This document shows, piece after piece, positions 19,893 to 54,382 of a stretch of 64,000 bases of DNA (the stretch's first letter is position 1; each line of letters begins with the position of its first letter). The notes beneath the pieces were generated by a model, which made no database searches, was not told the DNA's origin, and worked only from the letters and a program-made list of their open reading frames with translations. Location of the stretch: the IMG/VR virus record IMGVR_UViG_3300033997_000243, positions 124,001 through 188,000 of that record, one strand, 5' to 3'. The position numbers were made by a program, and so were the translations under genes.

Positions 19893-19931
19893 TTCAGCGC
19901 AGACACTTACAAAATGTCTGCTAGAAATAAA
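19893..19931 (-). repeat. conserved post-stop hairpin, copy 1
   Basis: GCAGACA-UUUUGUAAG-UGUCUGC, 10 nt after the UAG. Confidence 0.6.
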
Positions 19932-20234
19932 CTACTCGTGAATCACCCAGTTTTCAGAGCATAAATCGCAAATGATAAACCAGCAAGGCATATCAAACAT
20001 TGAAGGATTGTCGGGCGCGTAAAACCAGACTCCATGTAATGCTTGTGAAATCTCAAGAGCTTTTTCTTTGGTGTAAGAATTGGCTGCTTTAATTTCTGCA
20101 CCTAAGCGTTGAACTTCAACAACATGGTGGCGAATACTTTTGATCTTTTTATATTCTTCCAGATTCGGAAGCACATGATCTGTTAATGCCGCCCACCAAC
20201 TTTTTAGATCAGTTATTTTAACTTGTTCGCTCAT
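19932..20234 (-). CDS. hypothetical protein
   Basis: AAGGAG RBS. Confidence 0.85.
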   Translation of the reverse strand: MSEQVKITDLKSWWAALTDHVLPNLEEYKKIKSIRHHVVEVQRLGAEIKAANSYTKEKALEISQALHGVWFYAPDNPSMFDMPCWFIICDLCSENWVIHE

Positions 20235-20242
20235 AAATCTCC

Positions 20243-20842
20243 TTAACGATTCGCCATCATTTCACGGAAAGAACTGCCAACTTTTTGATGCAAGAGTTCG
20301 GCTGATTTATTACCACCCAAATAAATAAATGGGTGATAGTAATGAATGACCTGTTGTGGCCGTTTGTCATCATCAAATAACACGCAATGATTTACACGTT
20401 CAAACACCATTTCGTACAAAGGTGAATAAACTTTTGTACTCACATTACATGAAGGCTCTTGCTGAGTATATGCAATGTCTTTGTAAGTGAACGAGTGAAT
20501 AAGCATTGCTACCAACTGAGGATCAGCAAATTTTTGAATGGTAAGTCTTGCGAATTCATCACGAATATCGAAAGTACCATCTTTTTGTTTTTCACCGTAA
20601 GCACAAACTTCATGGCCTGTAAAAGTAAAACATGCCAAACTTTTTCGCAGTTCAGGCTTGTATGGATTGTAGCGAATACCTTCACAAACCAAAATTGTAC
20701 GGTTTGCCAGAGAAAGCCTTGGATCAATTTGAGACATACCTTGCTTAAGTATGTCCAACATTGCTGAACCTTCGTAATCAGTGGCTTCAAGAATTTCTTG
20801 AAGCGATGAAGGTAAATTCATTTTCAAAAATACATCAGTCAT
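20243..20842 (-). CDS. hypothetical protein
   Basis: GAGGA RBS. Confidence 0.85.
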   Translation of the reverse strand: MTDVFLKMNLPSSLQEILEATDYEGSAMLDILKQGMSQIDPRLSLANRTILVCEGIRYNPYKPELRKSLACFTFTGHEVCAYGEKQKDGTFDIRDEFARLTIQKFADPQLVAMLIHSFTYKDIAYTQQEPSCNVSTKVYSPLYEMVFERVNHCVLFDDDKRPQQVIHYYHPFIYLGGNKSAELLHQKVGSSFREMMANR

Positions 20843-20862
20843 TCTATTGTCCTCTAGGGTAT

Positions 20863-22125
20863 TTAGTAAAGCAAGACTGGTTGGAGGTTCAATTTAGATT
20901 TTTTATCAGCACTTAACTTGAAGAAATCACAATAATATCTTCCGTTATATGATGTTATACATAACACTTCAGCACTATCTTTTTTGGATAGATATATGTG
21001 AGAAGGCAGCTCGGTTTCATACATTATTGTTCCAAAATCTGCATACTCATATTCTTCGTCTGCCGTCCAATGACATTTCTCCTCAGCTTCTCTGTATTCC
21101 AAACAATAGTCCAGTTCACCGCGCATCGATTTATTAGAACACCCATAAAAAACTTGAGCCTCTACTTCCTTAAAATCGCGGTTATTGAAGAAAAAAGGTA
21201 TAGCTTTTGTCAATTCAGTATAAACATTTGAGCTTATTACTTCAGCACTTGGACTTATTATGTAAGCACCCAAATCAACAGGATCGTATTCGTAAAAACT
21301 TGCGATATTAATTCTGCTTAAATGTTGAATGTAACTATCTAAGAAAAGACTAAACCAGTCAGACATTTGATCGCGTTGTTTTTTGATTTTAAACCGAAGC
21401 GAACCAATTTTATCCTTTAAAGTTTTAATAGTTTTTTCATTAAAAACACTATTTTTAAAACTCACTTCACTGAAAGACATGACAGCGCGTGTTTTATCTG
21501 GATAAGCATTGTACATTCTTAGTCCGGCATCTAACATACCATTAATAAAAAAATAATTTTCCAGAAATAGTTTTTGTAATTTTGTTAATTTAGATTTTCT
21601 ATTATCCACTAGAAATTCACTTATCTTACCCATGTATAGAGCAACTATTCTATGTAGAATAATAAGTTTTATTTCAGTGTATTTATCTTCGACTGAATCA
21701 GGATCTGGATCTGAATCCAAAGATGCTAAAAAACTGTATGGAGGCTTAGACCAACAAGCTTTAACATAAGCTATTGCCGTCTTGTACACATTTTCCAGTT
21801 GCACTCCTAACTCGAAATTTAAAATTTTCTTTAAAAATCTCTCTAAACTATGGGCTAAATCATGAGACTCGTCACAGTCAAAATAGTTTAATTTGTACAT
21901 ATCGGCTGGATACGAAAATTCATCAGGGAGATCTATAAGTGTTCGCATCATTGTTTCGGAATTTACTGCCTCATTGATGAATGCAGCAACTTCTGGAAAT
22001 AAAGTTATTCTAAACATCATTTCGCTTTTTACACAAAATATTCTCTTTAATTTTCCTTTGTGATTTAATTCTTTAATACGTGAAAATTCACGGGCGTCCA
22101 GAGGCATACGAAAATCTTTAAGCAT
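20863..22125 (-). CDS. hypothetical protein (AT-rich)
   Basis: 420 aa; AAGGA RBS. Confidence 0.9.
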   Translation of the reverse strand: MLKDFRMPLDAREFSRIKELNHKGKLKRIFCVKSEMMFRITLFPEVAAFINEAVNSETMMRTLIDLPDEFSYPADMYKLNYFDCDESHDLAHSLERFLKKILNFELGVQLENVYKTAIAYVKACWSKPPYSFLASLDSDPDPDSVEDKYTEIKLIILHRIVALYMGKISEFLVDNRKSKLTKLQKLFLENYFFINGMLDAGLRMYNAYPDKTRAVMSFSEVSFKNSVFNEKTIKTLKDKIGSLRFKIKKQRDQMSDWFSLFLDSYIQHLSRINIASFYEYDPVDLGAYIISPSAEVISSNVYTELTKAIPFFFNNRDFKEVEAQVFYGCSNKSMRGELDYCLEYREAEEKCHWTADEEYEYADFGTIMYETELPSHIYLSKKDSAEVLCITSYNGRYYCDFFKLSADKKSKLNLQPVLLY

Positions 22126-22237
22126 ACTTGTTTCCTTAAGTTAAAATTAACTGCAAATGATTCACGCAATTTACTTTTTGTGTAACAAAAGTCGGCAAAC
22201 TATTATTACTTAACTTTTATATCAGAACAAAACTGAT

Positions 22238-22279
22238 TTCACTGCAAACACTTTTAGAAAATGTCTGCTAGAATTCAAC
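22238..22279 (-). repeat. conserved post-stop hairpin, copy 2
   Basis: GCAGACA-UUUUCUAAAAG-UGUUUGC (one G-U pair), 11 nt after the UAA. Confidence 0.6.
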
Positions 22280-22570
22280 TTATTTTACTAAATGTGAATC
22301 CATAATCAATTTCATACGATTCATGCAAGCTGCTTCTTTTTGCGCCGCACAAGTTGACAAGCGATTTTCCATAAGTCTTTCAGTATCAAAGCAAATTGCA
22401 GGATCTTCTGGAAAGTCTTTTGTGGTGCATGTTTGAATGGCTTCACGAAACGCAACAAACTTTTCTGTTTGTTCTCGCTTTTCTTTGTTCAACATTGTAA
22501 GGCCGAGCACAGCAATCCATACGACATTGATTATTGCAACAAAGGCAACCGATTGGTTAGACATTGACAT
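22280..22570 (-). CDS. membrane-anchored small protein
   Basis: N-terminal TM, four Cys; start moved to MSMSNQ (AGGA). Confidence 0.75.
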   Translation of the reverse strand: MSMSNQSVAFVAIINVVWIAVLGLTMLNKEKREQTEKFVAFREAIQTCTTKDFPEDPAICFDTERLMENRLSTCAAQKEAACMNRMKLIMDSHLVK

Positions 22571-22583
22571 AGTATAAATCCTA

Positions 22584-23084
22584 TTATGAAATATCAATAG
22601 ATTCTTCTAATAATATTGAACGGAAAACCAAAGCATTGGAATAAGTTGTCATGCTGTTATGTCCACCGCCTGTTGAAATACTTTCCATAACTATCGTGGC
22701 CAAGTTTTGCGAGTCCTCCTTTTCGGCATCACGTATAACAATAGATCCATTTAATTCTTCCAGTTTATTCAACAAAGCCGTCAACTTTTTAGCAACCGAC
22801 TTGTGAACTTCTATTCCCATACTGCTATCAGGCATAAAGAAGAGATACTTTGGAAATGAAGATTCATCTTCCGCTGTAATAAATCTTACAGGCTTGCCTG
22901 TTTTAGAATCAAACTTTACTGCTGTTTCTTTCAGTCGTTGTGCTGTATGTAACAACTTTACAATAGAACTTAAAGCTTGGTTATACGAAACGCTTTTCGC
23001 TTCTTTCAAAAGCTGTATGTAGTCAGGATTTTCTACCAACCTAGTTTTTGCTGCTTTAGTTGGTTTACTTTTAGAACTTTTCAT
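22584..23084 (-). CDS. hypothetical protein
   Basis: GGAG RBS. Confidence 0.85.
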   Translation of the reverse strand: MKSSKSKPTKAAKTRLVENPDYIQLLKEAKSVSYNQALSSIVKLLHTAQRLKETAVKFDSKTGKPVRFITAEDESSFPKYLFFMPDSSMGIEVHKSVAKKLTALLNKLEELNGSIVIRDAEKEDSQNLATIVMESISTGGGHNSMTTYSNALVFRSILLEESIDIS

Positions 23085-23099
23085 AATATTCTCCAGATC

Positions 23100-23139
23100 A
23101 AAAATAGGTCGTGCGATCCTAAGACAACACGACCTTATT
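23100..23139 (-). terminator. intrinsic terminator
   Basis: AGGTCGTG...CACGACCT stem followed by ATTTTT on the minus strand. Confidence 0.7.
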
Positions 23140-23141
23140 TA

Positions 23142-23375
23142 TTAAACTTCTACAGCTGAACCGAATTGGCTTATCTGCGATTGAACTACTGAATGTTGAC
23201 TGAACTTTCCGGTGTTCGGATTTTTCAACAGAACACGAATTGATACGTCGCCTCCTTTTGATAGTGCGCGTGTGACCTCGCTTTTATCAAAGTCAATTAC
23301 GATACCATCATGGTCTGGTGCATCACGAAACGAAACAACAACTTTTTGACCTACGAACATTTTAGCTAATGACAT
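23142..23375 (-). CDS. small beta-barrel (SH3/KOW-like) hypothetical protein
   Basis: Start moved to MSLAKMFVGQKVVV (AAGGAG); first gene after promoter P1. Confidence 0.75.
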   Translation of the reverse strand: MSLAKMFVGQKVVVSFRDAPDHDGIVIDFDKSEVTRALSKGGDVSIRVLLKNPNTGKFSQHSVVQSQISQFGSAVEV

Positions 23376-23396
23376 GATTTGTCTCCTTGTTAAGAT

Positions 23397-23479
23397 GTGC
23401 CTATTATAGCAAAAATAGTATGTACCTACAATAGCTGTTTTTGACACACCTCGATCAGTTCAGTTACTTTCAACAGTTT
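23397..23479 (-). promoter_or_regulatory. sigma70-type promoter/hairpin/operator element P1
   Basis: TTGTAG-17-TATAAT with extended TG; upstream TGATCGAGGTGTGTCAAAAA conserved in four copies at identical spacing. Confidence 0.8.
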
Positions 23480-23971
23480 TTAATGTAATCGGGTTATCAC
23501 ATACCAACTTGTTGGCCCTAAATTTTTATAAGAGCAGCCCTTCTCCAAATAGTCTATTGAGTACAGATCTAATTCAGTCAAAGCTAAGATTTCCTGAAGT
23601 CCCTTGAGTGAACGAACCCAACGCTGTTGATCACTATTAACCAGTTCAAAGCTACGTACATCTTCAGCCGTATTATTTTTCTCAAGTGGATTATTTGAAA
23701 TAGTAATACTGACATGACCTTCAAGTTCACTGTGACCGATCTCAACTTTCGTCCAACCAGCATCAATAAACTTTTCAGTCAAATATTCTTTGTGTTGAAA
23801 CATGGCTACACTCAATGGAGTGGCGGCCATTAGATCTAAACTTAACAAATCTGACTGGCGCTCACGCTGAACCCAATTGTCTGTCACTACTTCAATAAGT
23901 TTATTGTTTAACAACTCTAAAGTTTTATCAGGTGACAGCATTACAAGATCTTTTGGTGTAATTAATTTCAT
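23480..23971 (-). CDS. hypothetical protein (shared Y/F-x3-GW domain family)
   Basis: FIDAGWTKVEI...GHVSITI; start moved to MKLITPK. Confidence 0.8.
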   Translation of the reverse strand: MKLITPKDLVMLSPDKTLELLNNKLIEVVTDNWVQRERQSDLLSLDLMAATPLSVAMFQHKEYLTEKFIDAGWTKVEIGHSELEGHVSITISNNPLEKNNTAEDVRSFELVNSDQQRWVRSLKGLQEILALTELDLYSIDYLEKGCSYKNLGPTSWYVITRLH

Positions 23972-23982
23972 TGGTTTCTCAC

Positions 23983-24621
23983 TTAAATTGAATCGTAGTC
24001 TAAGGCTGGTGCGCCTTCCCAATACAAGCGAACGGTTTTCCAGCTATCAAACTTTCTGTGATTGATCTTTGTTCCAAACTGATCAGCTATTCTTTGCTGT
24101 TCAATCTGAAAGTAAAGTGCTGTATGTTGGCCGTGAAGCCATTGACCTGCCGATGGAGGATTCGTCCCATGATAAAAACTTCTGGTGGCTCTTTTTCCAG
24201 AAACCGGATCGATATAGGTAACAACATGGTAATATTCTGTTCTGCCGTTACGTGAATTAGTTTTGGTACAAAAACGAATGTTGTTGAAGCCGCCACCTTT
24301 TACAGTTGGAACATAAGGAATATCTACCAATAATTGTTTGTAATATTGAATAGCGTGATCTACAGTTGCTTGTATTCCGCCATGTTTAGCATAATTAAAA
24401 TGCGTTCCATATCGAACACCTTCACGCACTAAACGAACTTGCAAATAACCTTTGTCTGGAAAGGAAAGCCCATGACCATTTGTTGACAAAAGTTTAATAG
24501 TTTCTTTTGAAAGTGCCTTCGTTACGTAGTTTGGTAAATTAGTGCAACCACGAGCAAACTTTGATTTTTCTTTTTCTTGCATCATTCTATCCATAAAAGA
24601 AAGGCGGGTAAGTCCCGCCAT
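23983..24621 (-). CDS. putative AP2-like DNA-binding protein
   Basis: YLQVRLVREGVRYGTHFNYAKHGG..A..HAIQY plus a second unit NIRF...YHVVTY...GKRATRSFY. Confidence 0.55.
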   Translation of the reverse strand: MAGLTRLSFMDRMMQEKEKSKFARGCTNLPNYVTKALSKETIKLLSTNGHGLSFPDKGYLQVRLVREGVRYGTHFNYAKHGGIQATVDHAIQYYKQLLVDIPYVPTVKGGGFNNIRFCTKTNSRNGRTEYYHVVTYIDPVSGKRATRSFYHGTNPPSAGQWLHGQHTALYFQIEQQRIADQFGTKINHRKFDSWKTVRLYWEGAPALDYDSI

Positions 24622-24629
24622 TTATTGCC

Positions 24630-24836
24630 TTACTTTTTATCAGTCTCTTCTGATAAAACTGACTTATTACAGTCAATAATAAGTTTGAGTTTACCGGAAG
24701 ATTCAGGCCGCTTTTTCGCAATAACAACAGAAAGTTGATCTGTCGGTAAAGGCTCAGTGCGCTGAATAAAAAAAGCGGTATCGGCTGCGTTCTTCAAGAA
24801 CTCAATTGTTTTCTTTTGGTGTGGAAAAAGATCCAT
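24630..24836 (-). CDS. small hypothetical protein starting with an SF2-helicase Q-motif-like segment
   Basis: MDLFPHQKKTIEFL; AAGGA RBS. Confidence 0.65.
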   Translation of the reverse strand: MDLFPHQKKTIEFLKNAADTAFFIQRTEPLPTDQLSVVIAKKRPESSGKLKLIIDCNKSVLSEETDKK

Positions 24837-24846
24837 AAATTTATCC

Positions 24847-25293
24847 TTAATCCAGAACAGTGATAACGCCAAAGCTATCACCGACTTTAATAACATGGCC
24901 TTCCATCAGATCGCCAACTTTTCTGAATTGACCGTCAGCAAGTTCAACAATACTATCAGAAGTAAGTTCGACAACTGATCCAGCTTTATTTACAATCGAA
25001 CTAAAGCTAACGCCACCAATGTCCACGCCCATTGTATAGTCATAACACTTGATAAGCTCTGCATCATCTGGATGTGAACTGACTCCAAGTGTTGAACTTT
25101 TACCACTGCAAACAATAGACGAGCCAAAGAAACTTATTTCACCAGCCGAAAAAATTTCGCAATCTTCATCAAAAGATTCGCGGATCATCTGCTTTAGAAT
25201 TTTAAACATTTCGGCGTGAACAAATTGATTCGGCATAATCAAAGGAACTTTACGAGAAAGTTCACCTTTAGTAACAGCAACTACGTATTTCAT
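24847..25293 (-). CDS. hypothetical protein with C-terminal Hint/intein-like fragment
   Basis: GSVVELTSDSIVELADGQFRKVGDLMEGHVI. Confidence 0.75.
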   Translation of the reverse strand: MKYVVAVTKGELSRKVPLIMPNQFVHAEMFKILKQMIRESFDEDCEIFSAGEISFFGSSIVCSGKSSTLGVSSHPDDAELIKCYDYTMGVDIGGVSFSSIVNKAGSVVELTSDSIVELADGQFRKVGDLMEGHVIKVGDSFGVITVLD

Positions 25294-25303
25294 AGTAAAT
25301 TCC

Positions 25304-25900
25304 TTATGTTACTGGCTTAATAAGTTTATCAATCTTATCGATCCAGATTGCACGTTTGCCCTCGGCCAGTGCTTTACGCATTGTTTCGCGGCCATCTTCT
25401 GTAAGCTCTCTACGGTAAAATTCATTGGCCTTAGAAAAGATTGTTGAATTGCCGCAAAGATGAAGCCCGTTATCAGATTTCAACAACGTCTGTAAATCTT
25501 CAGGTTCTATTGCCAATACGTAACCATCAGGACGACTGCCCCAATTTAATTCGTATTCTGTAACACTGGCTACCCAAATAAAAACCAATGATACTTCGGT
25601 TTTTAAAGACACTTTGTTAAAGGCAGCAACTTTTTGGCCATATGTTAAGCAACCAATGCTTTCGATGCCTGTTGCACACAAACGCACAACTTTAATGGCA
25701 TCGATCATTTGTTCGGCATACTCAGTTTTGTCGGGTCTGCGAATTGTTGCATCGTATGCACCTATAAAACTTAGGTAGGCAACACGCTCGACTTCTTTAA
25801 TGGTATTGCCTAATCGATCTTCTTTTGTAGCATTAAATAAAAAACTTAATGCACTTTCAACGCTGTTGGCGTCAAATAAATCTTTGATTTCTACTTTCAT
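25304..25900 (-). CDS. hypothetical phage protein
   Basis: EYELNWGSRPDG motif; AAGGAG RBS. Confidence 0.85.
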   Translation of the reverse strand: MKVEIKDLFDANSVESALSFLFNATKEDRLGNTIKEVERVAYLSFIGAYDATIRRPDKTEYAEQMIDAIKVVRLCATGIESIGCLTYGQKVAAFNKVSLKTEVSLVFIWVASVTEYELNWGSRPDGYVLAIEPEDLQTLLKSDNGLHLCGNSTIFSKANEFYRRELTEDGRETMRKALAEGKRAIWIDKIDKLIKPVT

Positions 25901-25910
25901 AGTGTACTCC

Positions 25911-26744
25911 TTAAACGACCAATGAACGCAAGTGCATATAAAAGGCTTTTGTTTCGCCGTCCAGATCAGTTATTTTAACGTCTGTTGTGGCCCGTTGAAG
26001 TTCAAACTTTATCTTACTTCCAATAAAGTAATCATGCACTGCCCAACTTTTAAGCGTAGAGTCTGTTGGAGTAAAATCGAAAACAAGTTCGACTGCATCT
26101 GTTCCGTGTTCTTCAAAGACACGAGCAATTTCATGTTGGTGTGTTGTGACTGCTAAACGACCACACAATGAAGTTTCATTGTCGCTAAACTTTTTGGCTG
26201 ACTTCAAAGTACCCAAAGAAATACTACGCTCTATATACCAGATAAACTTTTTCAGTGTATCATTCGTACCGCATTGATACGCAACGTGGACACAGCAATT
26301 ACGTAACACAGGATCAAGATCTACTGAATTAAGTTTGACACAAAACTTATCTATTAAAGCTTGTGCTTCTTCATACTCAGCTTTGAACAGTGCTTCACCA
26401 AGTTTGTTTTCTAACACAGCAGACGCACGATCCACAGTAATGATTGCCAACATTTTATCCAAAGCTGCATTGACAACGCCGTCAGTCAACAACTTTTTAA
26501 TATAGCTTTCATTGCCTAAGTTATCGCCTTCTTCACACGTAAGTAAATTTGTGCGTTTAATTTGAAAGGCAAGAGTATCACGCATTACACCAAATAAATG
26601 GGTTTTGGCTGATCCATCTAAATCAGCTTTACCTAGAACGCGGTGAATCATTTTTCCGTTGTACGCATCTTCTTTGATCATCGTACTGGCTTTTGCAAAG
26701 ATTACAGAAATATCTAACTGATGGTTTGGTGTTGATAGTAACAT
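25911..26744 (-). CDS. hypothetical protein (paralog of 49285..50088)
   Basis: AAGGAGG RBS; shared C-terminal half. Confidence 0.85.
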   Translation of the reverse strand: MLLSTPNHQLDISVIFAKASTMIKEDAYNGKMIHRVLGKADLDGSAKTHLFGVMRDTLAFQIKRTNLLTCEEGDNLGNESYIKKLLTDGVVNAALDKMLAIITVDRASAVLENKLGEALFKAEYEEAQALIDKFCVKLNSVDLDPVLRNCCVHVAYQCGTNDTLKKFIWYIERSISLGTLKSAKKFSDNETSLCGRLAVTTHQHEIARVFEEHGTDAVELVFDFTPTDSTLKSWAVHDYFIGSKIKFELQRATTDVKITDLDGETKAFYMHLRSLVV

Positions 26745-26772
26745 AGCGGTTCCTCCTTTGGAACGGGTTGCT

Positions 26773-26826
26773 TTTAACTAGAGTAGTTAATTTTGGACAC
26801 TCAAAAGAATGCCCAATCAAAATACA
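26773..26826 (-). repeat. conserved post-stop hairpin, copy 3
   Basis: UUGGGCA-UUCUUUUGAG-UGUCCAA (G-U pair), 10 nt after the UAG, then a TTAACTA/TAGTTAA palindrome. Confidence 0.5.
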
Positions 26827-27021
26827 CTAAGGTTGAACTTTTAGAAAGCCGTACTTTTCAATAGCGGCAATTCGTTCGGGTGTAAAATCGCCAGAAACTT
26901 TCTTCAAGCTTGGTGGATTTGTACTCAAGACTTCGGCAACTTCTACACTACTGCCGTCATTGAAGTCGTATCGCCACACAGCACCTTGTAAGTGCGTATC
27001 TTCGATTACCATTAATTGCAT
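26827..27021 (-). CDS. hypothetical protein
   Basis: AAGGGG RBS. Confidence 0.8.
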   Translation of the reverse strand: MQLMVIEDTHLQGAVWRYDFNDGSSVEVAEVLSTNPPSLKKVSGDFTPERIAAIEKYGFLKVQP

Positions 27022-27039
27022 TTATTTCCCCTTATCAAT

Positions 27040-27261: not shown

Positions 27262-27297
27262 AGCGGTTACTCCGGTAACAGGTTGAAAAGATTAAGA

Positions 27298-27663: not shown

Positions 27664-27670
27664 ATTATCC

Positions 27671-28012: not shown

Positions 28013-28043
28013 AATTGCTTTCCTTGTTTGCTCTAACTTGTAG

Positions 28044-28520: not shown

Positions 28521-28534
28521 GATTTTTCCAAACG

Positions 28535-28557: not shown

Positions 28558-28561
28558 ATAA

Positions 28562-35860: not shown

Positions 35861-37015
35861 TTACTTTCCTATGTCAGTAAAGCAAACTTTTCTGTCCAAA
35901 TCAAATTCTTTTGAAAAGTGACTCTCAATCATTTCCATAGTGAATGGGACAAGTTTACCTATTGGATAATTTTTTGAATCCGCATGATAGCCGTGAACAC
36001 ATTTTGGTATTCTGTGAGTTTTCCTCGATACATCTATGTACTCACCTTCGACTTTTGAAATGCCAGAGAATCGTTGTACATCATAGCGCTCATGTTTTTG
36101 TAACGCATGTTCAGCATAAGCAATGTTAAGAAACGCTGTTCTGCACAAATATTCTGGCCCCATTGCTTGCCAAACATTGTTTGGTCTGTAAGGATTCTGA
36201 TCCGGCATCCAAGATTCATGATGCACTAAAGAACATGCCAATTTCATAGCCATCATGCAACGATGATTTAGTTCAGTGAATTCGCAATGAGTTGTAGTTT
36301 GTCTGTCATTTTCAAATTCACGGGATAGCAAACGCTCCATAGTATAGAACGCTTCGATTTTACGCAACCACGAATTTGTTTCATCTACATTCGGTACGTA
36401 TTTTTGAGCAAACGAAGTGTCACCCAAAGAATAATACAATTCGTTTTGTACAATGCCAAAATGTTGATCTTCGCCAGTTGAGAACAAACAAAACTGCAAA
36501 TTGTTATCCGCATCTACTAAACGTATTCTATAGATGATTTGAGATTCAGCCGGAGTTAAACCATGCTTTAATTTGTGCAGCACAACTTTTGAGGTTGTCC
36601 ATTTATGTTTTCCAGTTAACTTAGAAAATTGATCAAACAAATTATCTGGAAGAGCATCAAGAACCATTGACCTGCTTTCGGTAATGTAAAATAAATTTTC
36701 GTAGCTTAACCTGTGAGAATCTAATTTGGCTACGCTGTATGCTTCAGAAATAGCATGATTGATTCTCATATCAATAAACTCATGCGCGGAATTTGGAATA
36801 TCAAGCGCAAATTCCTGAAGAAATCTTTTTCGCAAGCTCAATACACTTGAACAAGTTGAGTCAGCTAAAACTGTTATCAAAGCTTGTTCAATAGTAAACT
36901 TAGGATCTAAGGAATTTTTCTGAATATTTTTCGCTTTCTCAAAAACGAAATTCAACCAATTATTTAAAAAATTGGACAGTTGTTGTGTAAGTGAATTGGT
37001 GTGAAGGTTAAACAT
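35861..37015 (-). CDS. hypothetical protein
   Basis: 384 aa; AAGGA RBS. Confidence 0.9.
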   Translation of the reverse strand: MFNLHTNSLTQQLSNFLNNWLNFVFEKAKNIQKNSLDPKFTIEQALITVLADSTCSSVLSLRKRFLQEFALDIPNSAHEFIDMRINHAISEAYSVAKLDSHRLSYENLFYITESRSMVLDALPDNLFDQFSKLTGKHKWTTSKVVLHKLKHGLTPAESQIIYRIRLVDADNNLQFCLFSTGEDQHFGIVQNELYYSLGDTSFAQKYVPNVDETNSWLRKIEAFYTMERLLSREFENDRQTTTHCEFTELNHRCMMAMKLACSLVHHESWMPDQNPYRPNNVWQAMGPEYLCRTAFLNIAYAEHALQKHERYDVQRFSGISKVEGEYIDVSRKTHRIPKCVHGYHADSKNYPIGKLVPFTMEMIESHFSKEFDLDRKVCFTDIGK

Positions 37016-44547: not shown

Positions 44548-44553
44548 GTTCTC

Positions 44554-45995: not shown

Positions 45996-46007
45996 TCTGT
46001 TTTCCTC

Positions 46008-47087: not shown

Positions 47088-47096
47088 AAGTTACCT

Positions 47097-47582: not shown

Positions 47583-48040
47583 TCTACAACCCTCAAATGC
47601 GGTTTTGGTTTTGCCACTTCTTCAACTACTGGCTGATTTTCACCAATGAAAAGATTCATATCAACTTCAAAAGAAGCGCAAAGGCCAAGTGTAAGATCTT
47701 CTATTTGAAGAATGCAACCGATTGGTACTTTGAAATAACAAGGTGCTTTGTTTACTGATACGTAACCAATAACAAACTGATCGTCAATTATTAATTCTGG
47801 ACACGCATTTCGATGAATAAACACATGAAGAATTCCTTCACGATCTACAGTTGGATTAGCCATTAAACTTGGCGATATATCCAAATTCTTAGCAACCAGT
47901 ATGTCAGGTGCTGCTTGAGGATCTTCACCTGCGACAGCGGCTTTAATAAGAAAAGTCATTCGCACACGGCTTTTACCTGTACGAACAGAATCACAAATTT
48001 GCATTACGCGAGAAACTTTTGAGGATTGAAAAACATTCAT
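47579..48040 (-). CDS. sspB: SspB-like ClpXP protease adaptor
   Basis: EGILHVFIHRNACPELIIDDQFVIGYVSVNKAPCYFKVPIGCILQI...GLCASFE aligns with the SspB core; ends KPHLRVVE (ClpX-binding XB motif; E. coli RPALRVVK). Confidence 0.75.
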   Translation of the reverse strand: MNVFQSSKVSRVMQICDSVRTGKSRVRMTFLIKAAVAGEDPQAAPDILVAKNLDISPSLMANPTVDREGILHVFIHRNACPELIIDDQFVIGYVSVNKAPCYFKVPIGCILQIEDLTLGLCASFEVDMNLFIGENQPVVEEVAKPKPHLRVVE

Positions 48041-48041
48041 A

Positions 48042-48896: not shown

Positions 48897-49273
48897 TAGA
48901 CTATCCTTCTAACAAACATTGCACCTAATTGCAGAATAGTGATAACAACCATAAGACTTGTAAAAATGTCAAAGATTCTTATCTCATGCCATTCAACATC
49001 TAATTGCTTTGTGAGTTTATCTAGCTGACCCGCAGCACATTCTTGAATTCTTTTGCGTCTGCTAAACAAATATTTTGTATTAAACCATGTTAATGCAGAC
49101 ACCAGAACAAGATAAATCATAATGCTGACGGTAAGCCAAGCATCCACAAAAAGTTTGCTAACTGTTTCGCGGCAAACTTCTGTATACAACAAAGCACAAC
49201 AAGTAACAGCTGCAAAACAGCCAAAAGCTTTTGCTATGGCTATTACTATGCTTTTATACCTTTCATAATCCAT
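48896..49273 (-). CDS. membrane protein
   Basis: Three TMs; start moved to MDYERY (AAGGAG). Confidence 0.8.
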   Translation of the reverse strand: MDYERYKSIVIAIAKAFGCFAAVTCCALLYTEVCRETVSKLFVDAWLTVSIMIYLVLVSALTWFNTKYLFSRRKRIQECAAGQLDKLTKQLDVEWHEIRIFDIFTSLMVVITILQLGAMFVRRIV

Positions 49274-49284
49274 AGCAATGCTCC

Positions 49285-50088
49285 TTAGAATTTTTCGAGG
49301 CGAGTCAGCCACTCTGCTTCTGGAAAACTAGCTGACGCTGGATTGTACGCATACATAACCAAAGTTTCAGTTGTGTTAGCTGTTAGCTTTACTATAAGGT
49401 AATCCCTTACAATAAAGTCGTCGGGTTCCCATGAAGCTTTAGTTTGATCTTCAATAATCAATTGAAAAACCAACCGGACTTCTTTCTGACCGTACTCCTC
49501 AAAGGCTTTAGATATGCACTTTGAATTTATGTCCTGCAATAGTTGGTTTGTTTTATCGTCAAACACATACAACTTCATGTTTTTTGAATTTCGGCAGGTA
49601 AAGGAACCTAACTTCAATGCTCTTTCTAAATACAGATAAAGCGTTCGTACTTCACGCAAAGAAGCACATTGATTCAGCACATGCTGCATAGCATTGCAGA
49701 ACGGCTCTGGATTCTTAGCGCTGATCATGCTCATAGTTTTTTCTATGGTCAAGTTCCATTCAGTGCCAGTCAATTCAGATTGATGTGTTTGAAACTTTTC
49801 TAACATCTTGAGTTTCTCACATTCTAATCTGAGATTTAACTTAAGATAGTTGTAGGCCATAGAAAGGGTTGGGCCATCGAAAATCTGATTTACAAACGAT
49901 TCAGTGAATACCGGATCTTTTGTTAAACTACCTATGATAGAATCCTTCATCAGCTTTTCTAACATTTGACGCTGTTCAGCTGTTTCAAGATCATTCATGC
50001 AGCTGATTAAAACTTTGGCGTCAACAACTTTTGTTATTTCTTCCAAAGCACGACTAATTAAAAACAGTATATCAAAACCTTTAGACAT
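49285..50088 (-). CDS. hypothetical protein (paralog of 25911..26744)
   Basis: HV.NQC...Y.ERA..LG and FEEYG..EV.LVF...D.T..SW..DD shared. Confidence 0.85.
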   Translation of the reverse strand: MSKGFDILFLISRALEEITKVVDAKVLISCMNDLETAEQRQMLEKLMKDSIIGSLTKDPVFTESFVNQIFDGPTLSMAYNYLKLNLRLECEKLKMLEKFQTHQSELTGTEWNLTIEKTMSMISAKNPEPFCNAMQHVLNQCASLREVRTLYLYLERALKLGSFTCRNSKNMKLYVFDDKTNQLLQDINSKCISKAFEEYGQKEVRLVFQLIIEDQTKASWEPDDFIVRDYLIVKLTANTTETLVMYAYNPASASFPEAEWLTRLEKF

Positions 50089-50100
50089 TTTTAATTCCCC

Positions 50101-50436
50101 TTAAAGAAATTTGCGTAGCCAGCGTTTAACACGGCTCACAACAATAGTTGGATCATAGCGACCTTCTGGCGGAAAGTTGTCGTTTATTAATCGCGTTAAA
50201 TATTCGGCCAACTTTTTGTCGGCAATTGGAACAGCTTTACTAAAGTCGTGAGCATCATGTTTGTACACAACACCTAAAGCGCAATTGTGTCTGGTAAATC
50301 TGTAGTGACTTAATCCGACACGTATGTAATAAAAATGCTCACCTAACCTCCGTTGAAATAAAATTCGGACGGTAAAAAGTTTGTAGATTAGACAAGCAAA
50401 CATCAAAACGATAAGTGTAAGAAATACATAGTCCAC
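50101..50436 (-). CDS. membrane-anchored protein (tandem paralog)
   Basis: TM then IRVGLSHY...KKLAEY...KRWLRKF. Confidence 0.8.
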   Translation of the reverse strand: MDYVFLTLIVLMFACLIYKLFTVRILFQRRLGEHFYYIRVGLSHYRFTRHNCALGVVYKHDAHDFSKAVPIADKKLAEYLTRLINDNFPPEGRYDPTIVVSRVKRWLRKFL

Positions 50437-50447
50437 TATAAAGTTCC

Positions 50448-50771
50448 TTACCAGTAAAATTTACGCAAGAAGCGTTTGGTCTTAGCTTGATCCGGCATCA
50501 CATCTTTAAAATGTGTGAACACTAAATCTATGACGTAGGTTTCCAACTTTTTGCTATCAACCAAAATTTCATCGTAGCAAAAATCATCATCTATTCGGTA
50601 AACAGAAAGATTCCCAGTTTCACTAGATCTGCGAATGACATAGTTCGACCAGCCTACACGAATGGTTAATGCACCAGTACGATCTTGATGCAAACAAACA
50701 CTTAATACTCTATACAGGCCAAGCACAAAAATAATGGCTGGAATAGATAAAGCAAAATACATTATATTCAT
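50448..50771 (-). CDS. membrane-anchored protein (tandem paralog)
   Basis: TM then IRVGWSNY...KKLETY...KRFLRKF. Confidence 0.8.
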   Translation of the reverse strand: MNIMYFALSIPAIIFVLGLYRVLSVCLHQDRTGALTIRVGWSNYVIRRSSETGNLSVYRIDDDFCYDEILVDSKKLETYVIDLVFTHFKDVMPDQAKTKRFLRKFYW

Positions 50772-51049
50772 TTGCTTACTCCAAGATTAAATTTGTGCAT
50801 GTGTTCTTTGGCCCAATGTCCTTGTGGAAAACCATTACTGATAACACAGGCCATAGTTGCTTCACAGAGAAAAACAAGGTCATCAAAATTTGCGGTTGTT
50901 GTTTTAGATTTGGCTGCAAGCGTGTATTCATGGATAACACCGTTTGCGTCCACAACATGGTTAATATTGACTTTGTGGTTATTCTGTTTTGCAATTACTT
51001 GCTTAAGCGCTTTTTGTTTTTCACTATAAAAGAAATAAAGGGTTTCCAT
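50768..51049 (-). CDS. hypothetical protein
   Basis: AAGGA RBS. Confidence 0.8.
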   Translation of the reverse strand: METLYFFYSEKQKALKQVIAKQNNHKVNINHVVDANGVIHEYTLAAKSKTTTANFDDLVFLCEATMACVISNGFPQGHWAKEHMHKFNLGVSK

Positions 51050-51557
51050 TTATCGTCCTTACATTTGATTCAAGTTTTTCTATGGCCGCGAAAAGTTTAT
51101 TCAGTTCAGCCACAATCTTTTTAACCTGAGCTTTAGTTTGTTTAATACTTTTGTCTGTATCAGGATACCAACTAATACTTTGACTACAGCAAGAAATTTT
51201 AAGGCCCAAACTAATTTCAATGGCTCCACGTTTCTTAAGGTAAGTAATCATGGAACCAGAGTAAGTGCTTGTTTCTGGATTTAACCAAGAACGTAAAGTA
51301 AATTCTTCATCTACTTTAGGATCTATATGAAGAAACCTATCCAACATAGTCAATACGATTTTAAGTTTGTTTTTAAAATCGGTTGAACAACAGCTTGGAT
51401 TTTTATCATCGCTGTGTATGTGAATAGTGTTGTTTCCATTGGTTAATTCAAAATATGCTTGAACACATTCTGTTGTGGCCCAAGCACTCCAACGAATTGC
51501 ATGAAAAGTTTTAGGATCTAACCATGCACGGTTTCTAATTGGCTCCATGTAACTCAT
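51024..51557 (-). CDS. hypothetical protein with internal duplication
   Basis: RAWLDP...helix and RSWLNP...helix. Confidence 0.8.
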   Translation of the reverse strand: MSYMEPIRNRAWLDPKTFHAIRWSAWATTECVQAYFELTNGNNTIHIHSDDKNPSCCSTDFKNKLKIVLTMLDRFLHIDPKVDEEFTLRSWLNPETSTYSGSMITYLKKRGAIEISLGLKISCCSQSISWYPDTDKSIKQTKAQVKKIVAELNKLFAAIEKLESNVRTINGNPLFLL

Positions 51558-51560
51558 AAA

Positions 51561-52406
51561 CTATTTAACCTCGAACACGTACAGTATAATGCAATGAGTT
51601 ACCACTGATAAAACAATGGCTACTAAATTCAACATCCGAGCTTTCAATAATTTTCGGCCCCATTCAGCAATTTTATCTGTTAGCAAAGTGCCTGAACTTG
51701 CCGAAAAACTTTGATAAGTTTCAGTTAACCAGAGTTTTATTCTGCGTTGATGAAGTTTTTCATGTATAAGGGTCGAGGCCACAAAAAATATGTTTAGTGA
51801 GAGCGTTAAGTAGATTGCCCAACTTTGTACTGTATAACCTAAATCCATCAAATTAGATCTGGCGTACACATAAACACATACCATAGTTAATATTGAAAGA
51901 TTACCAATAGCGTTCGCAAGTAAAACACGAGAAAGTGTCAACCAATTTTGATCGTTGTTCAACAATTCTTCTTTCAAACTTTTTGCGGTATCTGAAGAAT
52001 CACCTACGTTTTCAGAAGTCAAGTCAGCAGCTGTAACCGAATAGTTTGCTGAAATATTATGATTCTTTGTCACAGTCCACTTAGGTAGAAAGTTTTGGAA
52101 GTCGAATTTAATTCTGAAAAGATCAGCCGGACATCCTTTAAATTCGTAATGAACTGTGCTTCCACTTGCACCCGTAAAATTGCTGAATTTAAAGCAACCT
52201 AAAAACGTAAGCCAGAAAACTTTGTAGCCATGCTTTTTTAAATAGTCTTTCTTCAAACACACGTTACGCAACAGCACGAAAAACATTGTGCAGGATATTT
52301 TTAGGTAGTCCCACAGCCCCCACAGTAAAATGAATGCAACGAAGGCTACACACAACCAACCAAAGACCTGAACAAGTCCATCAACTAAAGCTAAAATGGT
52401 TTCCAT
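51561..52406 (-). CDS. multi-pass membrane protein
   Basis: Several TMs; AGAGGA RBS. Confidence 0.85.
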   Translation of the reverse strand: METILALVDGLVQVFGWLCVAFVAFILLWGLWDYLKISCTMFFVLLRNVCLKKDYLKKHGYKVFWLTFLGCFKFSNFTGASGSTVHYEFKGCPADLFRIKFDFQNFLPKWTVTKNHNISANYSVTAADLTSENVGDSSDTAKSLKEELLNNDQNWLTLSRVLLANAIGNLSILTMVCVYVYARSNLMDLGYTVQSWAIYLTLSLNIFFVASTLIHEKLHQRRIKLWLTETYQSFSASSGTLLTDKIAEWGRKLLKARMLNLVAIVLSVVTHCIILYVFEVK

Positions 52407-52427
52407 AATACTATCCTCTAAAAAGAT

Positions 52428-53060
52428 TTATTTAAGGTTTGCCGCGAACGTCAAACTATGCCGCTGGATTGCCTCAAGTGGCGTTGCTGCGTATGGCCCA
52501 ACATCAATACGTTCGTCAGTGTGAAGCATTGTTATTGTATGCCAGTAGCGATGATCTTCTTTCATTGGATCAGCATTCACCACCAGTTCTGCAATAAAAT
52601 CTTTGCAATACGCAACAGCAGAAATTTCAGAATCAGTTGCCTTTATTTTATATTGGGGGTATTGCAATACAAATTCAGCAAGCAACTCATCTGACTTTAA
52701 ATTTGCGACATCAAACTGCAAAGTTGGAAAAAGTTGTTTAAGAATTACATTACTTAGCTGAGATTTTCCTGCGTCAGACGTACCAGCAATGACCAACATT
52801 TCACCTCTACGCAAACCGCCGTTTACTACAACCTCACCACCGTACCATTCACCGAGCTTTTGGGCCAATGATTGCGGAGGAATACTTATGTCTGTTAAAG
52901 AAAGTCCATCGTTTTGTGGTGCAGGAATTGGCTCACCAATTTTTTCAAACATTTCCCGTGCTTGAGCCAAAGTAAGTTCATGCGTTGGCATATGAACAGC
53001 AGATTCAATATGTTTTGGCAAAGCAGTTCTTTTCACTTGTTTTTTAAGATGCGGTTTCAT
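52428..53060 (-). CDS. hypothetical protein with orphan DnaB/RecA-type Walker A segment
   Basis: GGLRRGEMLVIAGTSDAGKSQL; AGGAG RBS. Confidence 0.8.
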   Translation of the reverse strand: MKPHLKKQVKRTALPKHIESAVHMPTHELTLAQAREMFEKIGEPIPAPQNDGLSLTDISIPPQSLAQKLGEWYGGEVVVNGGLRRGEMLVIAGTSDAGKSQLSNVILKQLFPTLQFDVANLKSDELLAEFVLQYPQYKIKATDSEISAVAYCKDFIAELVVNADPMKEDHRYWHTITMLHTDERIDVGPYAATPLEAIQRHSLTFAANLK

Positions 53061-53069
53061 AATATTCTC

Positions 53070-53495
53070 CTATATTAAAATTCGACGATGCGGGTAGTAA
53101 CTCATTAAAATATTACCAGACCCGATTAAACCACTTACCGCAGATTTGATTTCGTACTTATCCCACAAACTTTTTGCAAACGCATCAACAATGAATATAG
53201 GTAAATGGTCTAACACAACATAATCATATTTACCTTGGTAAAATTCAGAGATCACATATTTGGCCGCATAGTTTAAGGCTGAACGTGCGTAAGGGCAATG
53301 ATCTTTTCCAGCGGCTGCCTCGAAAAGATCTTGAGTTAATATCTCTGGATTAACGGTCAAAACAAAACTTTCATTCATTGCCTTTCTGTTGGCTTCGCTT
53401 AAAAGTCCAGCACGATGTCCAGACTTTTCTATTGAGTAATGTGTATCACCAAACTCAGAAAGAAACAAAAAGTTTAACGTATTTATTAATTGCAT
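53070..53495 (-). CDS. hypothetical protein (paralog of 58186..58587)
   Basis: YDYVVLDHLPIFIV vs PDYVLVDGIPLFFV. Confidence 0.8.
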   Translation of the reverse strand: MQLINTLNFLFLSEFGDTHYSIEKSGHRAGLLSEANRKAMNESFVLTVNPEILTQDLFEAAAGKDHCPYARSALNYAAKYVISEFYQGKYDYVVLDHLPIFIVDAFAKSLWDKYEIKSAVSGLIGSGNILMSYYPHRRILI

Positions 53496-53556
53496 AATAT
53501 TCTCCTTTAAGAATTTTTGATTGCGTACACTAAAGTAATGTACGCTACAAACAAAC

Positions 53557-53985
53557 TTATTCGGTTTGAGAAGAAAGTTTCACCATTACAAAAGGAACTC
53601 CGCCGGGTAAACTGGAATTTCTTTCCCGTGGCGTTAAAGTCAGTAACTCAAGTGCAACGCCAAGACATACAAGTTGATCAACAATTCTTTGTTGGCCAGT
53701 CCAGAGCGCACCACTTTTATCAGCACACATATTCAGAAAAGTTTCACCTTCAGTTCTTCTGAAAGAATCATCCAGTTGATTTAACATATCAACAACAGAT
53801 TCTTTGTGGCCGCGACAACGCTCTGGATGAAAGCCAACTTTTGTGACAACACCTGAACCTAAAAGATAAGTGCCTTCTTCAAGAATTGGCCCTTTGTCAG
53901 CAACTTCCTCTCCACGAAAAAGAGAATCAAGAAAAATTGCTGTCACGTTTTCTGACGTAAGTTTCATTACATTTTGTTTGGTCAT
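53557..53985 (-). CDS. conserved hypothetical phage protein
   Basis: FHPER...MLNQL...F...TFLNMC.D..G..WTG pattern; GGAG RBS. Confidence 0.85.
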   Translation of the reverse strand: MTKQNVMKLTSENVTAIFLDSLFRGEEVADKGPILEEGTYLLGSGVVTKVGFHPERCRGHKESVVDMLNQLDDSFRRTEGETFLNMCADKSGALWTGQQRIVDQLVCLGVALELLTLTPRERNSSLPGGVPFVMVKLSSQTE

Positions 53986-53997
53986 ACATTTCTCCAA

Positions 53998-54309
53998 TTA
54001 ATCTTTTTTCCAATTACCATCAACGTAAGTGTAAGTACCTTCACCAACTTTGCAGTAAAAATCTAAGGCAGATATGGCTCCTTGGCCGTAACCTGCTTTG
54101 TTGCAAGCATCTGCAATAGTTGCACCCCTTACAACCTCTTTTTTACCACCAATAAAGTAAAGAGTGAATTCGTGAACGTCTGGCGTATTAGTCAGCACAA
54201 CAGCACGATCAATAACTTCCTGATCCACAACCAGAGTCACAGTTCCGTTAGCTTTATTAACGGTAAAAGTTGACGCCAGTATTTGCTTTAAAATTTCTTT
54301 TGCTTCCAT
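53998..54309 (-). CDS. conserved hypothetical phage protein
   Basis: FTLYF..GKKEVV.G.TIADA...AGYG.GA..ALDFY. Confidence 0.85.
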   Translation of the reverse strand: MEAKEILKQILASTFTVNKANGTVTLVVDQEVIDRAVVLTNTPDVHEFTLYFIGGKKEVVRGATIADACNKAGYGQGAISALDFYCKVGEGTYTYVDGNWKKD

Positions 54310-54342
54310 TTTGTTATCCTCTTTTTGTCAAGTACAATTGTT

Positions 54343-54382
54343 TTCATTGAGTACACTGAATGCAATGTACTCTAGTAAACAA
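54343..54382 (-). repeat. conserved post-stop hairpin, copy 4
   Basis: GAGUACA-UUGCAUUCAG-UGUACUC, 10 nt after the UAG; compensatory changes relative to copy 1. Confidence 0.6.

What the first reader, a model, noticed from the sequence alone, without database searches (positions are those of the whole stretch)
19893..54382. Covarying RNA hairpin placed 10-11 nt after stop codons, without a U-tract (four copies)
Seen on the mRNA strand: GCAGACA-UU..AG-UGUCUGC (19899-19921), GCAGACA-UU..AG-UGUUUGC (22244-22268), UUGGGCA-UU..AG-UGUCCAA (26793-26816) and GAGUACA-UU..AG-UGUACUC (54349-54372). Stems covary, mismatches are G-U only on the coding strand, the CAUU...AGUG core is invariant, and the distance from the stop is 10, 11, 10 and 10 nt. 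Three copies are preceded by CUA and followed by NN-UGAA, and a second small inverted repeat often follows. There is no poly-U, so these are not classical terminators. Inference: a protein-binding or processing RNA element (nut/put-like antitermination, RNase site or 3'-end stabiliser).
Basis: partly seen in the sequence, partly recalled or inferred. Interest (0 to 1): 0.68.

Follow-up and report, generated by a model that had tools for sequence, protein, structure and literature searches.

The report
T7-type RNase III sites in jumbo phage
The repeated hairpins are real, and they match in sequence, shape and spacing the sites where the host enzyme RNase III cuts phage T7 messenger RNAs, so they are most likely ordinary mRNA processing and 3'-end-stabilising signals, here found in a 320-kb jumbo phage.

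Summary
The window lies in a 319.5-kb jumbo myovirus with all genes on the minus strand. There are five copies, not four; the extra one is at 53508-53559.

Each copy is larger than described:
- a 12-bp lower helix that contains the upstream stop codon;
- a 2x3-nt internal loop (UA / NNU);
- a 10-bp upper helix whose top is C-G, A-U, U.G, U-A;
- a 3-5-nt loop.

That is 22 bp in all, with strong covariation.

A covariance model built only from these five copies returns six of the RNase III sites of phage T7 (R18.5, R1.1, R0.5, R1, R0.3, R4.7) as its six best hits in the T7 genome. A model built only from those T7 sites returns the five hairpins as hits 1, 2, 3, 5 and 6 in the window.

[quoted passage not shown] Verdict: these are T7-class RNase III processing signals. 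They are a new member of a known kind. Cleavage has not been tested.

The parts
19884..19935 (-). Element A. The lower helix includes the TAG stop of ORF 19932-20234. Internal loop UA/GCU; upper helix GCAGACAUUU/AAGUGUCUGC. Predicted RNase III cut after U19896 (between 19896 and 19895 on the minus strand).
   Evidence: 67 bits with R1; MFE -21.6 kcal/mol, z -5.1; T7-only model, hit 2, 19.8 bits
22229..22282 (-). Element B. The lower helix overlaps the TAA stop of ORF 22280-22597. The upper helix has the same 5' arm as A with one G.U. Predicted cut after U22241.
   Evidence: 63.8 bits; hit 6, 12.5 bits
26778..26830 (-). Element C. The lower helix includes the TAG stop of the 64-aa ORF 26827-27021. 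Upper helix UUGGGCAUUC/GAGUGUCCAA. Predicted cut after U26790.
   Evidence: 64.3 bits; hit 5, 12.9 bits
53508..53559 (-). The lower helix overlaps the TAA stop of ORF 53557-53997. Upper helix GCGUACAUUA/UAGUGUACGC. Predicted cut after U53520.
   Evidence: 67.2 bits; hit 3, 17.3 bits
54334..54386 (-). Element E. The lower helix includes the TAG stop of ORF 54383-54727. Upper helix GAGUACAUUG/CAGUGUACUC. This is the most T7-like copy. Predicted cut after U54346.
   Evidence: 68 bits; z -4.2; T7-only model, hit 1, 42.9 bits, E 4.5e-8

Best explanation
The five elements are T7-class RNase III processing signals inside long polycistronic mRNAs of a jumbo myovirus.

Inferred mechanism:
- Each transcript folds into a helix of about 22 bp, two helical turns, interrupted by a small asymmetric internal loop.
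- The host's RNase III, a dimer specific for double-stranded RNA, binds it. One recognition feature is the conserved U-A/U.G 'distal box' near the top of the upper helix. A mirror-image A-U/G.U(C) pair sits at the base of the lower helix.
- Because of the internal loop, the enzyme cuts only the 3' strand, immediately after the conserved U of the loop (NNU|N). That position is 8 nt 3' of the AGUG motif.
- The upstream mRNA then ends in the 10-bp upper hairpin, which shields it from 3'-to-5' exonucleases. The downstream mRNA begins with a 5'-monophosphate about 25-120 nt before the next start codon.

What is shown here: the structure, its covariation, and the reciprocal match to T7 sites.

What is inferred: cleavage itself, its exact position, and the stabilising effect. 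These rest on analogy with T7 R1.1 and on published RNase III rules.
For: 1. Structure. Each copy has 22 bp in two helices with a 2x3 loop. RNAalifold finds the same fold independently, 10 pairs change on both sides, and 0 of 500 shuffles reach the observed values.

2. Jumbo-to-T7 search. Model R1 was built from the five jumbo copies only. Run over all of T7 on both strands with filters off, its six best hits are 36814-36870, 5845-5901, 1425-1482, 3099-3152, 850-904 and 13851-13906. All are on the + strand and in full register. These intervals lie just upstream of genes 18.5, 1.1, 0.5, 1, 0.3 and 4.7, which is where the RNase III sites of those names lie. The 5845-5901 hit lies between genes 1 and 1.1 and has the GCAA tetraloop. 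That matches the published description of R1.1 (PMC1540722, PMC6121014).

3. T7-to-jumbo search. Model R3 was built from those six T7 sites only. Run over the 64-kb window with filters off, it ranks E, A, D, C and B as hits 1, 2, 3, 5 and 6. E scores 42.9 bits, E 4.5e-8.

4. Held-out sites. The combined model R2 finds T7 R6.5 (32 bits) and part of R1.3, neither of which was in its training set.

5. Combined alignment of 17 sites. 90.8% of cells are paired, 19 of 22 pairs change on both sides, and 0 of 500 shuffles reach the observed values. The U before the predicted cut and the basal A-U pair are invariant. The pair next to the basal A-U is G.U or G-C in all 17. The U.G and U-A pairs are kept in 14 of 17.

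6. Published determinants. The E. coli RNase III distal box is the canonical UA/UG step, with a stringent need for the U.G pair. Substrates span two helical turns. Internal loops limit cleavage to one strand and leave protective 3' hairpins (PMC1540722).

7. Occurrence in unrelated phages, which points to a host factor:
- a related jumbo phage, with 3-5 copies; in one copy the core C-G/A-U pairs are compensated to U-A/G-C while the U.G is kept;
- Alteromonas T7-like phages H4/4 and R8W and a metagenomic relative, where the element sits right after the major capsid gene; in H4/4 and R8W it lies ahead of a separate U-run terminator;
- an AT-rich metagenome contig with two copies.

8. Specificity. 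R2 gives no hit at E<=0.1 in about 0.8 Mb of four other phages and one marginal hit in a fifth. Only 1 of 80 metagenome stretches that match the bare hairpin pattern scores with R2.
Against: - There is no experimental evidence. The only runs that hold this phage are DNA runs, or assembled contigs of uncertain RNA status, and they show no transcript ends.
- The host is unknown, so the presence and specificity of its RNase III are assumed. The phage itself encodes no RNase III.
- By my mapping of published box positions, copies A, B and D (and G1 in the relative) have a C-G pair at the second pair of the upper helix. In the E. coli minimal substrate that pair weakens binding about 16-fold. These copies may be poor substrates, or may bind without being cut.
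- The internal loop is 2x3 nt here, against the 4/5 nt described for R1.1.
- B and C score weakly with the T7-only model on their own (about 12.5 bits, E about 2).
- More distant jumbo relatives (NCTB, PaBG, Y3) have no such site.
Confidence: 0.8

Rival explanations
1. The element is a binding or cleavage site for some other factor, such as a phage-encoded RNA-binding protein, translational repressor or endoribonuclease, and its likeness to RNase III sites is incidental.
For: Conserved top-of-stem nucleotides could mark a sequence-specific protein site. Nearly all flanking genes are ORFans of unknown function, so a dedicated factor cannot be excluded. The possible antideterminant pair in A, B and D would matter less for a different enzyme.
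Against: The same element occurs in unrelated phages (a jumbo myovirus, Alteromonas podoviruses, an AT-rich contig) and matches T7 sites cut by a host enzyme. A phage-specific factor would have to be shared by all of them. The conserved pairs are exactly the published RNase III distal box.
Confidence: 0.08
2. The element is a transcription terminator or pause hairpin that works without a U-tract, either for the host RNA polymerase with a factor or for a phage polymerase.
For: It sits directly after stop codons. In one copy of the related phage, a promoter-like ACTGTAAAT motif follows it.
Against: There is no U-run. The same region uses ordinary GC-hairpin plus T-run terminators. In the Alteromonas phages H4/4 and R8W the element is followed by a separate canonical terminator. 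No T7-like single-subunit polymerase was found in either jumbo phage. The 12-bp lower helix and the internal loop are not terminator features.
Confidence: 0.04
3. The element acts at the DNA level, as a palindromic operator, a cruciform, or a recombination hot spot that bounds mobile gene cassettes in the hypervariable region, like the PeSL motifs of T4-type phages.
For: All copies lie in the 121-200-kb block of small ORFan genes, which has no nucleotide similarity to the related phage. Yet near-identical upper helices recur in both phages (D with G1, E with G3). A wastewater strain contig skips 19866-19944, the stretch around element A.
Against: Pairing relies on G.U wobbles that become C-A mismatches on the other strand. 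The stems covary instead of keeping one protein-binding sequence. No sigma-70-like promoter accompanies the copies in this window. The match to T7 RNA sites is unexplained by a DNA role. A secondary role as recombination homology is not excluded.
Confidence: 0.05
4. The element is a nut/put-like processive antitermination RNA.
For: None beyond its being a conserved intergenic hairpin on the mRNA strand.
Against: From my own knowledge of lambda nut and HK022 put: there is no boxA/boxB-like arrangement and no two-stem put architecture. Rfam gives no match at gathering or permissive thresholds. The copies sit in the middle of operons after stop codons, not near promoters.
Confidence: 0.02

Closest known systems
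Phage T7 RNase III processing signals (R0.3, R0.5, R1, R1.1, R4.7, R6.5, R18.5), with R1.1 RNA as the model substrate
   Same: Both are intergenic and on the sense strand of polycistronic mRNA. Both have about two helical turns split by an asymmetric internal loop into a 10-bp upper stem and a lower stem of about 12 bp. Both have the U-A/U.G distal box at the same distance from the loop, (A/G)GUG on the 3' arm, and a U as the last loop nucleotide. The T7 cut follows that U according to coordinates I recall from Dunn & Studier 1983. Both have an invariant A-G at the base of the lower stem, and the stop codon of the upstream gene often lies inside the lower stem (T7 genes 0.4, 0.7, 4.5 and 18). 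Reciprocal model hits.
   Different: The host and phage type differ: a 320-kb myovirus of unknown host against a 40-kb podovirus of E. coli. The internal loop is smaller (2x3 against the described 4/5). The stems are AU-rich. The first pairs of the upper stem are G-C/C-G in most copies, where T7 has A-U/A-U. There are only 5-6 sites in 320 kb. Cleavage has not been tested.
Intrinsic (Rho-independent) terminators
   Same: Both are hairpins just after a stop codon.
   Different: The element has no U-tract, an extra lower helix and internal loop, conserved wobble pairs, and coexists with true terminators.
PeSL (promoter-early stem-loop) cassettes of T4-type phages (from my own knowledge; not tested against sequences)
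   Same: Both are repeated stem-loops in a hyperplastic region of small accessory genes.
   Different: No early promoter is attached to the copies in this window. The stems covary, and the element matches RNase III sites.

Membership tests
T7-class RNase III processing signal | An irregular hairpin of about two helical turns (about 20-22 bp) | tested here: met
   12 + 10 bp in all five copies. The requirement is stated in PMC1540722.
T7-class RNase III processing signal | An asymmetric internal loop between the upper and lower stems, which restricts cutting to one strand | tested here: met
   The loop is 5'-UA (GA in copy C) against 3'-NNU in all five copies. It is smaller than the 4/5 loop described for R1.1.
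T7-class RNase III processing signal | A distal box UA/UG with an obligatory U.G wobble, at a fixed distance from the scissile bond | tested here: met
   The U.G and U-A pairs are invariant in the five copies and are kept in 14 of 17 aligned sites. They are in the same register as in T7 R1.1. The determinant is described.
T7-class RNase III processing signal | A proximal box free of antideterminant pairs | tested here: inconclusive
   E and C have A-U or U-A at the second pair of the upper stem. A, B and D have C-G, which is inhibitory in the E. coli minimal substrate. My mapping of box positions is inferred from the text without the figure, and the host enzyme may differ.
T7-class RNase III processing signal | Sequence and structure similarity to bona fide sites, detectable in both directions | tested here: met
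   R1 gives T7 sites as its top six hits. R3 gives the five elements as window hits 1, 2, 3, 5 and 6. R2 finds the held-out site R6.5.
T7-class RNase III processing signal | Site-specific cleavage by RNase III in vivo or in vitro | not testable with these tools
   No RNA reads with end information are available.
T7-class RNase III processing signal | An RNase III is available in the infected cell | not testable with these tools
   The host is unknown. The phage encodes none (PF14622 and PF00636 absent).
Intrinsic terminator | A GC-rich hairpin immediately followed by a U-run | tested here: not met
   No T-run follows any copy, and the consensus scan does not flag them.
Any Rfam family | A score at or above the gathering threshold | tested here: not met
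   There are 0 hits at gathering thresholds over the window, and only noise at E<=5 over 19800-26900.

The most novel reading that the evidence does not exclude
The stop codon is built into the lower helix at a fixed register. The upstream ORF's stop overlaps the helix base in all 5 copies here, in 1 of the 3 strong copies of the related jumbo phage, and in 2 of the 3 Alteromonas-type copies. It lies in or at the edge of the lower stem in 4 of 6 T7 sites. A terminating ribosome would therefore melt the lower helix while leaving the upper hairpin intact. RNase III processing could then be gated by ribosome traffic, so that cleavage happens only when translation of the upstream gene ceases. That would couple mRNA segment stability to translation. 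It would be a regulatory layer on a classical element and has not, to my knowledge, been described for T7-type sites.
Probability: 0.15. Interest if true: 0.6.

Novelty: new member of a known kind. Interest (0 to 1): 0.42.

Why it matters
- T7-style RNase III punctuation of polycistronic mRNAs is not confined to T7-like phages of enterobacteria. The same signal, conserved at single-nucleotide level, is used by a 320-kb jumbo myovirus, by its relative, and by Alteromonas podoviruses.
- The signal is definable enough for a covariance model to find it with few false positives. No Rfam family covers it.
- Such a model can predict transcript boundaries in uncultured phages.
- It hints that the unknown host has an E. 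coli-like RNase III, so the host is probably a proteobacterium.
- It highlights a mirror-image second 'distal box' and the embedded stop codon as conserved features worth testing.

Tried and rejected
- **Rfam.** Gathering thresholds over the whole window and E<=5 over 19800-26900 gave nothing relevant.
- **Known-phage DNA.** Megablast of the region against known phages found no match.
- **Flanking proteins.** Pfam and PHROGs on the ten flanking proteins gave ORFans. Two matched PHROGs of unknown function, and one of these is a widely scattered accessory gene, useless for synteny.
- **Upstream genes as paralogs.** I considered whether the upstream genes are paralogs that carry a shared 3' UTR. 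I ran no pairwise comparison. The Pfam and PHROG scans gave them no family in common, and their lengths differ (64-146 aa).
- **Phage-encoded RNase III or T7-like RNA polymerase.** Neither was found. The Pfam control for PF00940 did not ring anywhere, so the tblastn result is the usable one.
- **More distant jumbo relatives and a Vibrio podovirus.** NCTB, PaBG, Y3 and phiV141 have no sites, and the Yersinia phage has one marginal hit.
- **Sequencing runs.** The holders are DNA runs of subsurface metagenomes and wastewater 'RNA-Seq' runs kept only as contigs of a strain 95-99% alike. They give no information on RNA ends or strand.
- **T7 RNase III annotation.** It is absent from both T7 records held. 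Site identity therefore rests on the gene-name convention, on the literature description of R1.1, and, for exact cut coordinates, on my memory of Dunn & Studier 1983.
- **Metagenome pattern scan.** Of the 80 stretches I scored (495 kb), 79 were chance matches to the bare hairpin. Some came from human-gut metagenome assemblies. These are microbial contigs, were only scored, had no hit, and were not used further.
Full report
**Setting**

The window is bases 124001-188000 of a 319,518-bp IMG/VR virus record with direct terminal repeats. GC content is about 37%. Every sizeable ORF in the window is on the minus strand.

The phage is a jumbo myovirus:
- It has a tail sheath, DNA polymerase, helicase and NAD-dependent ligase.
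- Its sheath is 45.6% identical to that of Phage NCTB and about 38% identical to those of PaBG, Erwinia Y3 and Dickeya AD1.

The window lies in a 121-200-kb block of about 150 small co-directional genes. Most are ORFans.

**Observation**

Read on the minus strand, the four reported hairpins are exactly as described.

A strict whole-genome scan added a fifth intergenic copy, D, at 53523-53545, 11 nt after a TAA. That scan required the CATT...AGTG core and a stem of at least 5 bp with G.U allowed. The window holds five such hairpins with stems of at least 7 bp. In 200 dinucleotide-preserving shuffles the mean is 0.15 and the maximum is 2.

**Anatomy**

- The loop-proximal UU/AG pair with each other (U.G and U-A), and one further covarying pair closes the loop. 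The upper helix is therefore 10 bp with a 3-5-nt loop.
- In a fixed register the flanks form a 12-bp lower helix, separated from the upper one by a 2x3 internal loop. The 5' side of the loop is UA (GA in copy C). The 3' side is NNU.
- The lower helix starts at or over the stop codon.
- RNAalifold predicts the same structure independently.
- Across the five copies 91% of cells are paired, 10 pairs change on both sides, and 0 of 500 shuffles reach the observed values. Slid registers pair only 35-50%.
- Single-sequence folds give z-scores of -4 to -5.
- The fold is specific to the sense strand because of its G.U pairs: copy E scores 68 bits in sense and 15 bits in antisense.

**Copies elsewhere**

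- Own genome. Model R1, built from the five copies, finds only those five strongly in the whole genome. It also finds a weak sixth candidate at genome 67561-67617 on the + strand (L012:7561-7617). That candidate scores 24.5 bits with R1 and 28.5 bits (E 0.004) with the broader model R2. It has a clean 10+10-bp two-helix fold.
- Related jumbo phage. This 286.6-kb phage has a sheath 74% identical and is syntenic in its core genes at 65-75% nucleotide identity. It has no nucleotide similarity in the accessory block.
  - It carries three strong copies, a terminal-repeat duplicate of one of them, and weaker copies, all in the same accessory block.
  - One copy replaces the 'invariant' C-G/A-U pairs with U-A/G-C while keeping the U.G/U-A step.
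  - In this phage the stop-codon distance varies (10, 14 and 16 nt, or no adjacent stop), so the distance is not obligatory.
- Alteromonas-type podoviruses. A pattern scan of viral contigs followed by model scoring found the element in T7-like podovirus contigs.
  - In the longer contig it sits directly after the major capsid gene (TAG, then 10 nt, then the hairpin).
  - The cultured relatives, Alteromonas phages vB_AspP-H4/4 and vB_AmeP_R8W, have it at the same place. In both it is followed by a separate hairpin plus U-run terminator.
- AT-rich contig. A 2.6-kb metagenome contig carries two more copies, each overlapping or just after a stop codon.
- An element shared by unrelated phages points to a host factor.

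**Identification**

- Folding the T7 early intergenic regions showed the same architecture and the same core. R1.1 reads GGUCAUUC-GCAA-GAGUGGCC, which gives the pairs C-G, A-U, U.G, U-A.
- R1 contains no T7 sequence. Run over the whole T7 genome with filters off, its six best hits are six intervals on the + strand, in full register. They lie immediately upstream of genes 18.5, 1.1, 0.5, 1, 0.3 and 4.7. T7 RNase III sites are named after the gene they precede, so I take these to be R18.5, R1.1, R0.5, R1, R0.3 and R4.7.
- The R1.1 assignment is confirmed by the literature. R1.1 lies between genes 1 and 1.1, has a GCAA tetraloop, and has an asymmetric internal loop (PMC1540722, PMC6121014).
- In the other direction, model R3 was built from those six T7 sites alone. 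It ranks E, A, D, C and B as hits 1, 2, 3, 5 and 6 in the 64-kb window. E scores 42.9 bits, E 4.5e-8.
- In a combined 17-sequence alignment 90.8% of cells are paired, 19 of 22 pairs change on both sides, and 0 of 500 shuffles reach the observed values.
- The model built from that alignment, R2, recovers the held-out T7 site R6.5 and part of R1.3.
- R2 gives nothing at E<=0.1 in NCTB, PaBG, Y3 and a Vibrio podovirus, and one marginal hit in a Yersinia jumbo phage.
- Only 1 of 80 metagenome stretches that match the bare hairpin pattern scores with R2.

**Fit to known RNase III rules** (PMC1540722)

- Substrates span two helical turns.
- Internal loops restrict cleavage to one phosphodiester and leave 3' hairpins that protect against 3'-5' exonucleases.
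- The distal box is the canonical UA/UG step, with a stringent requirement for the U.G pair. This is exactly the invariant pair step here.
- By my recollection of Dunn & Studier 1983, the T7 cuts at 1468, 3138 and 5887 fall 8 nt 3' of (A/G)GUG, after the last U of the loop. The same count in the jumbo elements lands after the conserved loop U.
- The alignment also shows an invariant A-U followed by G.U or G-C at the base of the lower helix in all 17 sites. This is a mirror image of the distal box, as expected for a symmetric dimeric enzyme. That reading is inference.
- This conserved A-G explains the 'fixed distance from the stop'. Preceded by U it reads UAG, and preceded by UA it reads UAAG, so ORFs can run right up to it.
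- T7 behaves the same way. The stops of genes 0.4, 0.7, 4.5 and 18 lie in, or at the edge of, the lower stems of R0.5, R1, R4.7 and R18.5.

**Mechanism proposed**

The hairpins lie inside long co-directional runs of genes, between widely spaced promoter-like ACTGTAAAT motifs. RNase III would cut the 3' strand at the loop. The upstream message would then end in the upper hairpin and be stabilised, and the downstream message would gain a new 5' end.

**Caveats**

- There are no RNA end data.
- The host is unknown, and the phage has no rnc gene.
- Copies A, B and D have a C-G pair at what I map as proximal-box position 2, which is inhibitory for the E. coli enzyme.
- The internal loop is smaller than that of R1.1.

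**Verdict**

This is a real, covarying RNA element. It is best explained as a T7-class RNase III processing signal, a new member of a known kind.

Noticed in passing
window 8717, 15246, 40198 and 61738 (-), and genome-wide: The motif ACTGTAAAT(C/A) occurs 34 times in the genome. Of these, 22 are intergenic, in sense orientation, about 15-35 nt upstream of ribosome-binding sites in both strand blocks. The related phage has 31 copies. It is probably a phage-specific (middle or late) promoter element.
   Followed up: partly
genome 67547-67617 (L012:7547-7617, + strand), outside the window: This is a weak sixth RNase III-type site (CAUU/GGUG core, 10+10 bp). It is preceded by a 6-codon mini-ORF (MKALLI) with its own Shine-Dalgarno sequence, and the mini-ORF's TAA lies at the base of the helix.
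   Followed up: partly
window 55396-55446 and 58618-58695 (-): Two intergenic regions share the string GTGTCAAAAATAGGGG. The second continues into a GC hairpin plus T-run terminator.
   Followed up: no
window 19866-19944: One contig of a wastewater run, from a strain 95-99% alike, skips these 79 bases. The skipped stretch covers element A, the whole intergenic region, and the last codons of the upstream ORF. This may be a strain variant without that site, but it rests on a single low-depth contig.
   Followed up: no
genome 121-200 kb, compared with the related phage (G001 235-286 kb plus 1-15 kb): The core genome is syntenic at 65-75% nucleotide identity. This accessory block has no nucleotide similarity and only scattered protein matches. 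Even so, near-identical RNase III-type hairpins recur in both phages (D with G1, E with G3).
   Followed up: partly
L077:1694-1800 and L078:1699-1810 (Alteromonas phages H4/4 and R8W): The major capsid gene is followed first by the RNase III-type element and then by a separate hairpin plus U-run terminator. No feature is annotated over either in the stretches fetched.
   Followed up: partly
L140:742-794 and 1969-2025 (-), metagenome contig JACDJB010021677.1: An unrelated AT-rich (31.5% GC) contig of small ORFs carries two further copies, each overlapping or just after a stop codon (TAATAG and TAA).
   Followed up: partly
genome 216312-220226 (L017:8312-12226, +): A 1304-aa protein has a Calx-beta domain and a weak C-terminal Pretoxin-HINT match that falls just below the Pfam cut-off.
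   Followed up: no
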